Assembly: GCA_965637545.1 (NCBI GenBank)
Contig: OZ281501.1
Coordinates: 2,356,001-2,420,000, forward strand
Source of the DNA: Phallusia mammillata
Lineage: Eukaryota
Length of the DNA: 64,000 nucleotides
Direction of reading: 5' to 3'
In this document: piece by piece, positions 47,941-63,301 of the stretch
Layout of the letters: every line of letters begins with the position of its first letter
Position numbering within the stretch: the first letter of the stretch is position 1
Made by a program: the position numbers and the translations under genes
Notes under the pieces: model-generated
Database searches by the model: none
Told to the model about the DNA's origin: nothing
The model's input: the letters and a program-made list of their open reading frames with translations, nothing else

Positions 47941-50592
47941 TTAATGTGTAATCTCATACGGGGAACTTTCTACAGTCATGTTAGGTTGAATATTCTCGTA
48001 TTGACTCTTATTGGTTGATCGGTTCCTTGCAAGATGTTGTTTATCTTGAAGTCTGAAAAAATCACAGATGAACTTTAATTTAGCTCGTTAGTTGTTTTGT
48101 TTACAATTATTTTTGGAAATACGTATTTAGGTTCACGCGGGGTTTTCTATGTTACTGTTTTCAAAGGATTATTTCAAACATTGGAATTTGAACTTGCAAA
48201 TACAGCACACTACATATCGCACTATATAAAATATATTTGTGGTAAACCTCGGGTAGCCTATTCCAGACCCATTTCGACCAAAACATTGGTCCGGATTAGC
48301 CATAAAGATCCGGATTAACCGATGTCGGTTAGTTCAAGCCTTACCACATTTCAAATCGTTTGTACCTCAAGTTTGTTTAAATTATACGAAAATTCGGATT
48401 AACTGAATCCAGTTTAACTGAGGTTTACTGCATTACAATACCCAATAATAGAAAGTAGGTGTTGTTAAGTCTGTAGATGATATTAATTACCTGTTTGTAG
48501 AAACTGTTTCCTCATTAGAATAAATGTGATTTGTGTTTTGATTTGTTGCTTTATCTGATAAAAAAAACACATACGTTTCTTATCAAATTAAATTTAAACT
48601 TCAAAACAAATCAAACCTTGACTTTTGTTTCCATGACAACGCTGCTTTGCCATTACAATTGCCAGAGTCATGGCAATAACGCTGACACAGCATAATAGCA
48701 CAGCAAGTGCGATGACCGATTGAGAATTGTTCTCAGATGTGTTAACTCCATCAATAATAATTGATTTGTTGCACTGATGATTGTTATTAGTATTATTAGA
48801 CAGTTCTCTGACACCAATAACCCACACATGCACTTTGAAAGTCTCGTTAAACGGTTTCGGTGATTTTATAACCACAGAATATTCGCCCAAGTGTGTCTTG
48901 GTGACCTGTTTTGAAACATAAAGCTGGTTATTGATGCTTTTTGTAAAAAGAAATCAATTTTTTGAAAAACTTACGTTTGTAAAATGCATTAAGACTTTGT
49001 TTTTAATTCCATCAGTCAGATAGTAAATGTTGTTAATTTGTTTACCTGGAAACATAGTAATTGTTAATATGTGTCCTACAAAAAACCATTAATAGCCCAC
49101 TTCTTGTCCCATTAGGTTATTTGTTCGGAGTAAATGCGAAGTTGTACCTTGTTTAAAACCGGTAATTGCATCTGACCCAGACAATGCGGGGTTTGACTGA
49201 AAAGTTATTTCAACAAAATTTTGCTGATACAAGGTCACGTTGTAATACATGAAGCTGTTGTTTCGAACTTGAGGTGGGACTGTGAGATAGAAATCAAAGA
49301 AACATATAATACGATGTTTATGTGAAAGTTTTCAAAACGGCCCACATACATTGGACGTTGAGTTTAATTGATTTTGTTTCCACCTGTTGTTTGTCACGTG
49401 ATGTTTGTTGACACGTCACGAGGCTATTGTGGTGTGATGACGTCACAGTGATATTTGCCCACGCAAACTAAACGCATCAAATGATTGTCACACCATAGTA
49501 CTTAGGTTTGTTTTCTAAGACAACTAGATACCTCGTCCCCAAAGTAAGTTATATTTTTGGATGTCATCAATACATTTGTCATATCGGAGTTAAAGAGATC
49601 ACAAAACAACAAAACGTTTGAGTATTGCCTGAATGTTTGATTGTAAGCAGGGTTGTTCAAATCCACAAAGTTGCCTAAAAAATAATTTAAGACATAAACA
49701 CAACCACAAACATTAGGTAACCTTGTTTTACCTTTATAACATTTTAAGTCGGGTTCGTTCCATTGTGCAAACCTGTTGCAAAATATTTTTTCTCTGCGTC
49801 GTTTTGCTGTGGAATTTTCCATAAATACCGAGTTGTTGCATTGCACAGTGGCTGTGCTGAGAAAACTTCGACCGTTTGATACATAATGCAAATTTGTCGA
49901 GTGTGGACAATCTGTGGACAAATGTTGCACAAATAGGATTAAATCATACTCATGTTTTTTAAATCATACTCATGTCATCAGAAAGTTTACTAACTTACAT
50001 TTAAACGAGAGTATAGGAGTTGGGTGAAATAACAACGACTCCCCAAAAATGTTTTTTACTGTGAAGTTGATAGCATATCCATCGTATGCTGATGCATTAG
50101 TCAATACAAATTTTGCAACAATAGAGTTTGATGATTGGATTGATTGAAAGACAAAAGGTGGGTTGTGATCAACCTTTGAAAGACTGTTTTCGAAAATGAC
50201 ATACCAAGTCACAAAGTTGGACTTGTTGTTATACATGTTTAAGGAAATGACCGAATAACTGCCTGGTTCGTAGTTTGTAAACGAAAGATTAAAACTAATA
50301 TTTGAGACACCAACTGCCCACTGGAAGGATGGATTGGCAAAATGCATTGAAACTTTGCGAGCGTCAGCCCCTAAAATAAAGTAGTCTCATGAAAGCATCA
50401 CACTTTTGTCACAAAACTTGTTTTGAAAACATTTTAGCCAATTTGTTTTGCCATTTGCCAGTTTTTTTAAAAAAACTTATTTACAATATAGTGCACACAA
50501 ACAAAATAAATGTGTCATTTCTTACCGCATATTTTGTAATTCTGCAAAACCAAAAATGCTACGATAACCAAAAGGCCTTGATAACGACCCAT
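47941..50592 (-). CDS. Ig/CCP type-I membrane receptor, copy 1 (apparently intact)
   Basis: Signal exon MGRYQGLLVIVAFLVLQNYKIC (ATG 50592); V-like exon 50370-49999; CCP exon (CPH...C...FC...WNEPDLKC); two exons for a Cys-containing Ig; three exons for an I-set-like domain (FQSNP...FTNVTKTHLGEYSV) with stalk and TM VIALAVLLCCVSVIAMTLAIVMA; tail exons with HIYSN and SQYENI...SPYEITH*. All junctions are in phase. Confidence 0.85.
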
Positions 50593-60896: not shown

Positions 60897-63301
60897 TAGG
60901 GCTGGCTTGCTTTATTTATTTATTAGTTTATTAATTTGATTTCCATGGTTATCAAAAGAAGGCAATGCGCCAAAGGTTGGCCTCCACTGAGTTAAAGCCT
61001 TACCACATTTCAAGTCATTTGTACCGCAAGTTTTGTGTCAATTATAAAAGATTCGGAATGACCGAATCCAATTTAATCGAGACTTACTGTATTACAAAAC
61101 CCAATTAAAGAAAAGAAATGGTTAAATGTAAACATAATATTGCTTGACCTGTTTGCAGAAACTGCTTCCTCGTTAGAATAAATGTGATTTGTGTTTTGGT
61201 TTGTTGCTTTATCTGAGAAAAAAAAACTTACATGATATTTTTTATCAAACTCCAATTTAAATATCAAAACTACCCAAACCTTGACTTTCGTATCCATGAC
61301 AACGCTGCCTCGCCATCATAATTGCCAGAGTCATGGCAATTACGCTGACACAGCATAATAACACACCAAGTGCGATAACTGTTTGGGAATTGTCAAATGT
61401 GCTAAATGCGTCAACTTCATGATTGATTGGTTTGTTAGACTGGTTAAAGTTAGTATTATTTGACAATTCCTCGACACCTATAACCCACACATACACTTTG
61501 AAAATGTCGTTAAAAGGTTTCGGCGACTTTATAACCACAGAATATTCGCCCAAGTGTGTCTCAGTCACCTGTTTTGAAAGGTAAAGCTGGTTATTGATGC
61601 TTTTTTTGTGAAAAGAAATCAAATTTTTGAAAAACTTACGTTTGTAAAATCTATAATGACTTTGTTTTCAATCCCATCAGTCAGATAGTAAATGCTGTTA
61701 ACTTTTTTACCTGGAAACATAGTTATTGTTAATATGTGTTTTGCGAAAACCATCAATAGCCAACTTCTTGTCCCATTACAATGTACTAAAGTTTAGTCAC
61801 CAAACATATATTTGGTCGGAGTAAAAACGAAGTTGCACCTTGTTTAAAACCGGTTACCGCATCTGATCTAGACAATACGGGGTTTGACTGGAAAGTGTAT
61901 TCAACATAATTTTGCTGATACAAGGTCACGTTGTAATACACGAAGCTGTTGTTTCGAATTTGAGGTGGAACTGCAAGATAGAAATCATGATTCATGTCAT
62001 ACGATGTTTATGGCAATGTTTTTTAAATTCGACCCACTTACATTGGGCGTTGAGTTTTACCGATTTAGTTTCAACCTGCTGTTTGTCACGTGATGTTTGT
62101 TGACACGTCACAAGGCTATTGTGGTGGGGTGACGTCACAGTGATATTTGCCCACGCAAACTAAACACATTAGATAATTGTGACATCATAAGCTTTGTTTT
62201 ATAAGATAACTAACATACCTCGTGCCCAAAGTAAGTTATACTATTGAATGTCATCAATACGCTTGTCATATCGGAGTTAAAGAGATCACAAAACAGCAAA
62301 ACGTTTGCGTATTGCCTGAATGTTTGATTGTAAGCAGGGTTGTTTAAATCCACAAAATTTCCTAAAAGAATAATTTGAAACATTAACCCCTTGACGAAAA
62401 TGAGGTGAACTGATTTAGTATTACCTTTGTAACATTTTAAGTCGGGCTCATTCCATTTTGCAAACCTGTTGCAAAATATTTTTTCTCTGCGACCTTTTAC
62501 TATAGAATTTTCTACGAACACTGAGTTGTTGCATTGTACAGTGGCAAAACTGGCAAAACTTCGATCGGTTGGTACATAATGTTTGTCTTGCATATTTGTC
62601 AAGTGTGGACAATCTGTGGACGAATGTTGCACAAATAATATTAAAGAAAACTCATGTTAGATTTTGTCAAGAAAAAAATTGTAAGAGAAAGTTGATTGTT
62701 TACTTAACTCACATTTAAACGAGAGTTCCAGAGTTGAATGAACCAATCGCGCCCAGCTTATATCTCGTACTATAAAATTGATAGCATATCTATCGTATGC
62801 TGATGCATTAGTCAGTACAAAATTTGCTAGAAAAGTGTTGGATGATTGGTTTGTTGATTGCAAAGCCAAAGGTGGATTGGGATAAACTTTTGAACGGTTG
62901 TTGCGTAATTCGACATACCCCAGCCAAAAGTTGGATTTGTTGAAGTATATTTCCATGAAAATGTACTTAACTTTGTCTGATTCGTAATTTGTGAAGGAAA
63001 GATTGAAACTAATGTTTGAGACACCAACCGCCCATTGAAGTGATGGATTGGCAAATTGCACTGAAACGTTGTAATCGTCAACCCCTGCAAAAAACGTAGT
63101 TCCATGAATACCTCACAATTATCAAAAATGACTATTTTATAAACATCAGCCAATTATGTTTTGCAATTTGCTATTTTAACAAAACTCAATTACAGTAAAG
63201 TGCACACAAACAAAATAAAGATAAAATTTCTTACCACATATTTGGTAATTCTGCAAAACCAAAACGACCACAATAACCAATAAGCCTTGATAACAACCCA
63301 T
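60288..63301 (-). CDS. Ig/CCP type-I membrane receptor, copy 4 (apparently intact)
   Basis: Signal exon MGCYQGLLVIVVVLVLQNYQIC (ATG 63301), V exon 63084-62713, then CCP, Ig, I-set-like, TM and tail (HIYSN; SQYENI; SPYEITR*) exons, all in phase. Confidence 0.85.
60656..60989. mobile_element. hAT-type MITE nested in the mariner-type MITE of copy 4; contains an (AT)n microsatellite
   Basis: TIRs CAGGGGTGGCCAACCT / AGGTTGGCCTCCACTG; perfect TSD AGTTAAAG. The paralogous empty site TAGTTAAAGCCTTACCAC is at about 56114. Confidence 0.93.

What the first reader, a model, noticed from the sequence alone, without database searches (positions are those of the whole stretch)
49999..63084. Hypervariable patches confined to the N-terminal V-like domain
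Seen: the framework segments [VM][QH]FANPS[FL]QWAVGV[SL]NISF[NS]LSF[TA]NYE and FVLTNASAYD[GR]YAIN are almost invariant, while the segments between them diverge strongly. Copy 1 reads GSYSVISLNMYNNKSNFVTWYVIFENSLSKVDHN...VKNIFGESLLFHPTPI. Copy 2 reads GRIWSIDIILYNKKSSFGFWSVFVLNNKSAVNSH...VASQAVLRLLVHPTPM. Copy 4 reads DKVKYIFMEIYFNKSNFWLGYVELRNNRSKVYPN...VRDISWARLVHSTLE. The CCP, Ig, TM and tail exons, and even non-coding stretches, are visibly more conserved. Established: the C-C'-F-G face is the ligand-binding surface of V-type Ig receptors and the target of diversifying selection in CD2/SLAM, CEACAM, SIRP and Alr families. Inference: positive selection for distinct binding specificities.
Basis: partly seen in the sequence, partly recalled or inferred. 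Interest (0 to 1): 0.8.

Follow-up and report, generated by a model that had tools for sequence, protein, structure and literature searches.

The report
Variable binding face on sea-squirt receptors
Four neighbouring sea-squirt receptor genes, built like the 'fester co-receptors' of the colonial sea squirt Botryllus, have an antibody-like tip in which one face changes fast while its scaffold stays fixed. This fits selection for different binding partners, but the evidence comes from only four copies, two of them broken.

Summary
The four V exons lie at the stated coordinates. Framework segments are nearly invariant and the quoted patches diverge strongly: 31-46% of bases differ, against 21-26% in pooled introns and K2P distances of 0.08-0.18 in exons 3-10.

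The genes form a minus-strand tandem array of 10-exon receptors: signal peptide, V-like Ig, Sushi-like domain, two Ig-like domains, TM, and a three-tyrosine tail. This matches the layout of the FcoR (fester co-receptor) family published in 2024-25. Other agents of this scan noted FcoR-like clusters elsewhere in this genome. Only copies 1 and 4 are intact. Copy 2 has a 1-bp deletion in exon 3, copy 3 is a dead pseudogene, and a truncated fifth copy lies upstream.

The N-terminal domain has no cysteine but folds as a V-set domain (pLDDT 63; Z about 11 to antibody VH).

Positive selection is partly supported.
- The mean dN/dS of the patches is about 1 (ML 1.37, not different from 1).
- A site model with a class at dN/dS>1 fits far better for the V exon (2ΔlnL 31), but not for exons 3-10 (3.3).
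- 19 of 22 candidate sites lie on predicted strands C, C', C'', F end, the FG loop and G.

Mosaic history from gene conversion, the small sample and absent sense-strand RNA evidence are the main caveats. Binding specificity was not tested.

The parts
47941..50592 (-). Copy 1: intact 10-exon gene, 515 aa (signal peptide, V-like Ig, Sushi-like, two Ig-like, TM, three-tyrosine tail)
   Evidence: The gene model has AG/GT at every junction and an open frame.
49999..50370 (-). Copy 1 V exon (exon 2, phase 1-1)
   Evidence: AF2 model with 9 strands, pLDDT 63. V-set matches.
50165..50266 (-). Copy 1 hypervariable patch 1 (residues 35-68; BC loop end, strands C, C', C'')
   Evidence: Translation checked. 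dN 0.32-0.66. Sites with P(w>1)>0.8 are listed.
50012..50065 (-). Copy 1 hypervariable patch 2 (residues 102-119; end of F, FG loop, G)
   Evidence: Translation checked. dN 0.49-0.82. Codon indels make the alignment uncertain here.
51674..54314 (-). Copy 2: all ten exons present, but a 1-bp deletion in exon 3 shifts the frame
   Evidence: The deletion lies in the T8 run at 53563-53570. It is covered without any difference by 278-nt contigs of two public runs from two studies (table 8).
53724..54098 (-). Copy 2 V exon, open reading frame
55758..58715 (-). Copy 3: pseudogene
   Evidence: TAA at codon 7 of the V exon, a +1 frameshift in the V exon, a -5 bp deletion in exon 3 and a -7 bp deletion in exon 4.
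57753..58128 (-). Copy 3 V exon (disrupted)
60288..63301 (-). Copy 4: intact 10-exon gene, 518 aa
62713..63084 (-). Copy 4 V exon. Its synonymous divergence from the other copies is higher than in the rest of the gene.
63540..63897 (-). Truncated fifth copy: an exon-1-like segment plus the first ~41 codons of a V exon. Framework 1 is intact, then the sequence diverges and reaches TAG.
50886..53005 (+). Spliced antisense transcript across copy 2 (exons about 50886-50973, 51718-51806 and 52856-53005+)
   Evidence: Contigs of two runs that the tool guessed to be RNA match with 0 differences (table 8). The introns are GT..AG on the + strand only.

Best explanation
This is a tandem, birth-and-death array of receptor paralogs in an ascidian genome, with the same layout as the Botryllus FcoR (fester co-receptor) family. 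Each gene encodes a signal peptide, an N-terminal V-set-like Ig domain in a single exon, a Sushi-like domain, two further Ig-like domains, one TM helix and a tail with three conserved tyrosine motifs (IYSNE, SQYENI, PYEIT).

The V-like domain has no cysteines. Its A/B strands and the E-F 'NASAYDGYAIN' segment are held almost invariant by purifying selection (dN/dS 0.03-0.36 pairwise by NG86, 0.22 by ML).

A subset of about 15-20% of its codons has accumulated amino-acid changes faster than synonymous changes. These codons lie on predicted strands C, C', C'', the end of F, the FG loop and G. This sheet is the usual ligand-binding face of cell-surface V domains.

The most likely mechanism (inferred) is diversifying selection between paralogs for different ligand specificities. 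Gene conversion homogenises the rest of the gene. Signalling would go through the shared tyrosine tail.

Shown here: the gene models, the fold class, the rate pattern and the site-model test. Inferred: the binding face, the ligand and the signalling.
For: Gene models and intactness.

Layout match to FcoR as described in PMC12582321 and PMC12065747:
- 515-518 aa here, just under the published 520-610 aa.
- The first Ig domain is in one exon.
- The Botryllus FcoR-only cluster on chromosome 9 is a precedent for an array without partner genes.

V-set fold:
- AF2 model with 9 strands.
- Foldseek E 4e-4 to 4e-3 against VH, PD-1, CTLA-4, MPZL1 and CD8.
- VIA-align Z 10.5-11.1, rmsd 2.6-2.9 Å over 110-116 residues.

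Rates:
- Patch base divergence is 0.31-0.46 against 0.21-0.26 in introns.
- ML dN/dS is 0.22 in the framework, 1.37 in the patches and 0.46 in exons 3-10. My implementation agrees with iqtree2.

Site models, M1a against M2a (2ΔlnL):
- V exon: 30.6-30.9.
- V exon without the indel-adjacent columns: 14.1.
- Patches alone with their own branch lengths: 21.3.
- Patches without the indel-adjacent columns: 10.5.
- V exon without the pseudogene copy 3: 35.2.
- V exon, copies 1 and 4 only: 10.9.
- Exons 3-10: 3.3.
- In a parametric bootstrap under M1a (152 replicates) the 95% point was 3.9 and the maximum 6.6.

19 of 22 sites with P(w>1)>0.5 lie in C, C', C'', the end of F, the FG loop and G.
Against: - Patch-average dN/dS is not above 1 when the patches' own synonymous divergence is the yardstick (LRT 1.1-1.6; NG86 mostly 0.5-0.9).
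- There are only four sequences. Copy 3 is dead and copy 2 is frameshifted.
- The strongest site signal lies next to codon indels, where the alignment is uncertain.
- The copies have a mosaic history: topology support differs along the gene (p 0.006), and copy 4's V exon has higher synonymous divergence than the rest of its gene. Site models assume a single history.
- Multi-nucleotide mutations were not modelled.
- No sense-strand RNA was seen for copies 1 or 2 in two small runs, only an antisense contig.
- No FcoR sequence could be compared. No homolog of the V domain was found in any protein search.
- The face assignment uses predicted strands only, from a pLDDT-63 model.
Confidence: 0.55

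Rival explanations
1. Relaxed constraint. The patches are surface strands that tolerate almost any residue and drift at about the neutral rate. The array is decaying, and no selection for new specificities is involved.
For: - Patch-mean dN/dS is about 1 (NG86 0.5-1.9; ML 1.3-1.4, not different from 1).
- Two of the four copies plus one fragment are non-functional.
- No sense-strand RNA was seen.
Against: - M1a already contains a neutral class, and it is rejected for the V exon (2ΔlnL 31). It is also rejected for the patches alone (21.3, or 10.5 without the indel-adjacent columns), beyond all 152 null replicates.
- The signal persists without the pseudogene (35.2) and is absent from exons 3-10.
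- Patch divergence exceeds intron divergence.
- The patches keep their length, their strand-like hydrophobic alternation and an open frame in copies 1, 2 and 4.
Confidence: 0.2
2. Mosaic concerted evolution. Gene conversion keeps frameworks, other exons and introns similar between copies, while the patches escape conversion and simply show the true, older age of the duplicates. The contrast then reflects history, not faster protein evolution.
For: - Informative-site support for the three topologies differs along the gene (chi-square 27.9, p 0.006).
- Local near-identity tracts exist: intron 7 c1-c4 0.045, 3' flank c2-c4 0.127.
- Synonymous divergence in same-amino-acid codons is higher in the patches (0.32-0.51 in five of six pairs) than in the rest of the gene (0.22-0.29). 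It is also higher in copy 4's whole V exon.
- dN/dS of the patches exceeds 1 clearly only when gene-wide branch lengths are imposed.
Against: - With their own branch lengths the patches still prefer a dN/dS>1 class.
- Framework 1 of copy 4 has near-saturated synonymous differences but almost no replacements (dS about 1, dN 0.03). So old divergence does not by itself produce patch-like protein change.
- Escape from conversion is itself often maintained by selection for diversity.
Confidence: 0.15
3. Method artefact. With four long-branched sequences, the dN/dS>1 class is created by misaligned codons near indels and by multi-nucleotide changes.
For: Removing columns 104-113 halves the statistic, from 30.6 to 14.1 for the V exon and from 21.3 to 10.5 for the patches. 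Patch 1 alone gives 5.4, which is not significant.
Against: - The statistic stays above the bootstrap maximum after the uncertain columns are removed.
- The same test on 370 codons of exons 3-10 is negative.
- My M0 estimates match iqtree2.
Confidence: 0.1

Closest known systems
FcoR (fester co-receptor) family of Botryllus schlosseri / Botrylloides diegensis (Rodriguez-Valbuena et al., PNAS 2025, PMC12582321; De Tomaso review, PMC12065747)
   Same: - Type I membrane protein with a signal peptide, N-terminal V-type Ig, Sushi domain, two more Ig domains, one TM and a tail with tyrosine motifs, including the core Y-x-x-I/L/V.
- About 520 aa.
- The first Ig domain can be encoded in one exon.
- Clustered, with copy-number variation, birth-and-death evolution and intergenic recombination.
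- An FcoR-only cluster exists (chromosome 9 in Botryllus).
   Different: - No sequence comparison with named FcoR genes was possible.
- The species here is not shown to be a botryllid.
- The tail is shorter, and it lacks the paper's canonical ITIM (I/L/V at -2), hemITAM and core-2 motifs. It has S-Q-Y-E-N-I instead.
- No fester-family partner gene was seen in the window.
- I found no report of patchy hypervariability or dN/dS for the first Ig domain of FcoR in the main text of the PNAS paper.
CD2/SLAM-family N-terminal V-set domains
   Same: From general knowledge: these are V-set folds that lack the canonical intersheet disulfide and bind ligand through the GFCC'C'' sheet. Here there are no cysteines, and variation is concentrated on predicted C, C', C'', F and G.
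   Different: There is no detectable sequence similarity. The domain order differs (a Sushi domain follows the V domain). The binding face here is only inferred.
Vertebrate paired-receptor and leukocyte-receptor arrays (KIR, LILR, SIRP, CEACAM)
   Same: From general knowledge: tandem paralogs with pseudogenes, gene conversion, tyrosine-motif tails, and positive selection focused on the ligand-binding Ig domain.
   Different: These are unrelated genes with different domain composition. No activating, tail-less partner was seen here.
Hydractinia Alr1/Alr2 family (10.1101/2022.03.04.482883)
   Same: Invertebrate clusters of receptors with unusual V-like N-terminal domains and ITIM/ITAM-like tails. 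The membrane-distal domain is the variable one.
   Different: Cnidarian family without a Sushi domain. No homology is claimed here.

Membership tests
FcoR (fester co-receptor) family | Type I membrane protein with an N-terminal signal sequence and a single TM helix | tested here: met
   Exon 1 encodes a hydrophobic leader (MGRYQGLLVIVAFLVLQNYKICG). Exon 8 encodes one hydrophobic span (VIALAVLLCCVSVIAMTLAIVMA). Read from the gene model; no dedicated signal-peptide or TM predictor was run.
FcoR (fester co-receptor) family | N-terminal Ig domain, V-type in some members | tested here: met
   AF2 model with nine strands including C' and C''. Foldseek hits are all V-set. VIA-align Z 10.5-11.1 to VH. 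Model confidence is only moderate (pLDDT 63).
FcoR (fester co-receptor) family | Second domain is a Sushi/CCP domain | tested here: inconclusive
   The 59-62 aa phase 1-1 exon has the spacing C-x22-C-x19-C-x5-W-x6-C. There is no Pfam or PDB sequence hit, and the AF2 model is unusable (pLDDT 44).
FcoR (fester co-receptor) family | Two further Ig-like domains before the TM helix | tested here: inconclusive
   Exons 4-5 carry a ...LLFC...SLVTC... pair of cysteines about 45 residues apart. Exons 6-8 carry an HLGEYSV F-strand-like motif. They are split across exons, so they could not be handed to the fold or family tools by reference. Single-exon ORFs gave no Pfam hit.
FcoR (fester co-receptor) family | Cytoplasmic tail with tyrosine motifs (ITIM, hemITAM, core-1 YxxI/L/V or core-2) | tested here: met
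   YENI (core-1, within S-Q-Y-E-N-I), YSNE and YEIT are conserved in all four copies. The paper's canonical ITIM (I/L/V at -2) and hemITAM are not present.
FcoR (fester co-receptor) family | Sequence homology to named FcoR genes | not testable with these tools
   No FcoR sequences are held as text. The V-domain word search, the feature search and a profile HMMER search of 1.84 billion representatives found no true relative.
FcoR (fester co-receptor) family | Clustered organisation with copy-number change and intergenic recombination | tested here: met
   Four copies plus a fragment lie in 16 kb, two of them broken. Region-dependent topology support indicates recombination.
Canonical V-set Ig domain | Conserved B-F disulfide and core tryptophan on strand C | tested here: not met
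   There is no cysteine anywhere in the domain in any copy, and no invariant Trp on strand C. A Trp in predicted strand C' (W/W/L/G at alignment column 54) varies between copies. The fold is V-like, but the sequence hallmarks are missing, as in CD2-type domains.

The most novel reading that the evidence does not exclude
The predicted GFCC'C'' sheet and FG loop of the disulfide-less V domain form the specificity-determining surface of FcoR-type receptors. This FcoR-only array would then be a set of paralogs driven apart by diversifying selection, in an ascidian that is not shown to be a botryllid. That would give the first residue-level, testable map of where these candidate allorecognition or immune receptors contact their ligand.
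Probability: 0.3. Interest if true: 0.6.

Novelty: new member of a known kind. Interest (0 to 1): 0.42.

Why it matters
FcoR-type receptors were described only in 2024-25 as candidate signalling partners in Botryllus allorecognition. In what I could read of that work, it does not say which part of the first Ig domain determines specificity.

A conserved scaffold with fast-changing sites confined to one predicted sheet gives a concrete surface to mutate, swap or model. If confirmed with more copies and haplotypes, it would show the same evolutionary logic as vertebrate KIR, SIRP or CEACAM arrays in an invertebrate chordate.

As it stands, this is a modest extension of a known family, not a new kind of system.

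Tried and rejected
Searches that found nothing:
- Pfam on exon ORFs and on clean exon peptides gave no significant family. The only hit was a spurious Peripla_BP_7 at E 0.07.
- The word-index protein search with the V domain gave nothing, though its length window excludes full-length proteins.
- The ESM Atlas feature search gave scores of 0.81 or less against unrelated bacterial clusters.
- A profile HMMER search of 1.84 billion representatives returned two repeat proteins that I judged spurious.
- The Atlas fold search returned generic beta-sandwiches plus Ig-superfamily clusters and added nothing.
- The Sushi exon gave an AF2 model at pLDDT 44 that I did not search with, and no PDB sequence hit.
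- No relatives of the gene exist elsewhere in the window.
- Rfam found nothing in 44000-64000.
- ORFs in 30000-47900 gave no Pfam hit.

Technical failures:
- One script was an empty slip.

Steps I could not take:
- I could not hand a spliced full-length protein to any search, because only contiguous references are allowed. Full-length homologs and the second and third Ig domains were therefore not searched.

Ideas rejected:
- I considered that copy 2's frameshift might be a homopolymer assembly error. I rejected this because contigs of two other runs carry it unchanged, although these may come from the same animal.
- I considered that the RNA contigs might be a sense-strand splice variant. I rejected this because the introns are GT..AG only on the + strand.
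Full report
**1. What is there**

A self-comparison and a MAFFT alignment of the four repeat units show a minus-strand tandem array with a period of about 3.7-5 kb.

I derived a 10-exon gene model from the alignment, with AG/GT at every junction:
- Exon 1: signal peptide.
- Exon 2: the V-like domain, phase 1-1.
- Exon 3: a 59-62 aa four-cysteine Sushi-like unit, phase 1-1.
- Exons 4-5: an Ig-like domain with a cysteine pair.
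- Exons 6-8: a cysteine-free Ig-like domain, a stalk and the TM helix.
- Exons 9-10: a tail with IYSNE, SQYENI and PYEIT.

State of the copies:
- Copy 1 (50592-47941) is intact, 515 aa.
- Copy 4 (63301-60288) is intact, 518 aa.
- Copy 2 has one 1-bp deletion in exon 3, in the T8 run at 53563-53570. Contigs of two public runs from two studies cover it without any difference.
- Copy 3 is a pseudogene. It has TAA at codon 7 and a +1 shift in the V exon, a -5 bp deletion in exon 3 and a -7 bp deletion in exon 4.
- A truncated fifth copy lies upstream of copy 4. It has an exon-1-like piece and the first ~41 V codons, then a stop.
- No other relative exists in the window.

**2. The observation, quantified**

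Bases differing between copies:

| Region | Divergence |
|---|---|
| Patches (N-terminal 8 codons; alignment columns 34-67 and 102-120) | 31-46% |
| Frameworks | 9.5-17% |
| Pooled introns | 21-26% (Fisher p 4e-2 to 1e-10 against patches) |
| Exons 3-10 | K2P 0.08-0.18 |

Some short introns are as divergent as the V exon taken as a whole.

**3. Fold**

No sequence method recognises the domain. An AF2 model from the three open copies has pLDDT 63 and nine strands plus the short E-F helix.

Foldseek returns only V-set domains: VH, nanobodies, PD-1, CTLA-4, MPZL1 and CD8, with E 4e-4 to 4e-3 and TM 0.55-0.67. VIA-align gives Z 10.5-11.1 with rmsd 2.6-2.9 Å over 110-116 of 123 residues.

The domain has no cysteine at all, so the canonical disulfide is missing. 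There are four to seven N-glycosylation sequons per copy, three of them shared by all four copies.

**4. Selection tests**

Nei-Gojobori pairwise estimates:

| Region | dS | dN | dN/dS |
|---|---|---|---|
| Exons 3-10 | 0.27-0.35 | 0.08-0.12 | about 0.3 |
| Whole V exon | 0.33-0.78 | 0.23-0.28 | 0.36-0.69 |
| Frameworks | — | — | 0.03-0.36 |
| Patch 1 | — | 0.32-0.66 | 0.5-1.9 |

I wrote a GY94+F3x4 likelihood code. It reproduces iqtree2 for the patches (0.223-0.224 in the framework and 1.37 in the patches in both).

Patch dN/dS depends on which branch lengths are used:
- With the patches' own branch lengths it is 1.3-1.4, not different from 1 (LRT 1.1-1.6).
- With branch lengths shared across the V exon it is 1.57 (LRT 5.6).
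- With gene-wide branch lengths it is 2.4 (LRT 36).

The answer therefore depends on the neutral yardstick.

Site models avoid the hand-drawn partition. M1a against M2a gives the following 2ΔlnL values:

| Data set | 2ΔlnL |
|---|---|
| V exon (16-17% of sites, w about 8) | 30.6-30.9 |
| V exon without indel-adjacent columns | 14.1 |
| Patches alone | 21.3 |
| Patches without indel-adjacent columns | 10.5 |
| Patch 1 alone | 5.4 |
| V exon without copy 3 | 35.2 |
| V exon, copies 1 and 4 only | 10.9 |
| Exons 3-10 | 3.3 |
| Sushi exon alone (one site) | 6.7 |
| Other parts of exons 3-10 | 0-3.4 |

A parametric bootstrap of the patch data under M1a gave a 95% point of 3.9 and a maximum of 6.6 in 152 replicates.

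Of the 22 sites with posterior above 0.5, 19 lie in or next to predicted strands C, C', C'', the end of F, the FG loop and G. None lies in A, B or D.

**5. Caveats**

- The copies have a mosaic history. Informative-site support for the three topologies changes along the gene (chi-square 27.9, df 12, p 0.006).
- Local tracts are nearly identical between particular pairs.
- Copy 4's V exon has higher synonymous divergence than the rest of its gene (0.39-0.42 against 0.22-0.26 per synonymous site in same-residue codons).
- Part of the contrast may therefore be homogenisation of everything except the patches.
- Only four sequences were available, and two are non-functional.
- Multi-nucleotide changes were not modelled.
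- I had no model coordinates, so 'one face' is shown only at the level of strand assignment.

**6. Expression**

In two small runs that the tool guessed to be RNA, no contig matched the sense exons of copy 1 or copy 2. One contig in each run matched perfectly as three exons joined by GT..AG introns on the + strand, which is antisense to copy 2. Expression of the receptors is therefore unverified.

**7. What it is**

A literature search led to the FcoR family of Botryllus schlosseri and Botrylloides diegensis. Its published description is a signal sequence, a V-type Ig, a Sushi domain, two Ig domains, a TM helix and a tyrosine-motif tail. [quoted passage not shown] One cluster, on chromosome 9, contains FcoR genes only.

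The layout here matches feature by feature. Sequence-level membership could not be tested, and the Sushi and later Ig domains rest on motifs only (see the membership table). Other agents of this scan reached the same reading for clusters on other pieces of this genome. I found the paper before seeing those notes.

I found no analysis of hypervariable patches or dN/dS for the FcoR first Ig domain in the main text of the PNAS paper.

**8. Verdict**

- The V-like fold is supported.
- Strand-level localisation of the variable sites is supported.
- A V-exon-specific class of sites with dN/dS>1 is supported under standard models.
- The average patch rate is near neutral.
- History and sample size limit the inference.
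- Binding specificity was not tested.

This is a new member of a recently described receptor kind, with a useful hypothesis about its binding surface.

Noticed in passing
window 50886-53005 (+): Perfect-match contigs from two runs guessed to be RNA form a three-exon transcript with GT..AG introns on the + strand. It runs antisense to copy 2, overlapping its exons 10 and 6. About 170 nt of each contig lie outside the laid stretch.
   Followed up: partly
window 48304-48374 and 51954-52125: A short element inside intron 9 of the copies is a very high-copy repeat. Word depth is 16,000-187,000 against tens to hundreds, with many loose ends and joints in the DNA runs. It is probably a MITE- or SINE-like element.
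   Followed up: no
window 63540-63897 (-): A truncated fifth gene copy (exon 1 plus the 5' part of a V exon, with framework 1 intact) is fused to the 5' flank of copy 4. It looks like a relic of unequal recombination. The array may continue beyond the window end.
   Followed up: partly
window 58150-58650 and 60750-60900: Copy 3 has an insertion of about 400 bp in intron 1. Copy 4 has an insertion of about 330 bp in intron 9, with a (TA)n microsatellite.
   Followed up: no
window 53480-53658 (-): Copy 2's frameshifted exon 3 is a phase 1-1 exon. Skipping it would keep the reading frame and give a receptor without the Sushi-like domain. This is speculative and no RNA supports it.
   Followed up: no
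window 48798-48831 (copy 1 exon 8, stalk): Nine clustered base differences in 34 nt are carried by one contig in each of two DNA runs. This is either a divergent allele or a conversion tract from another copy in the stalk region.
   Followed up: no
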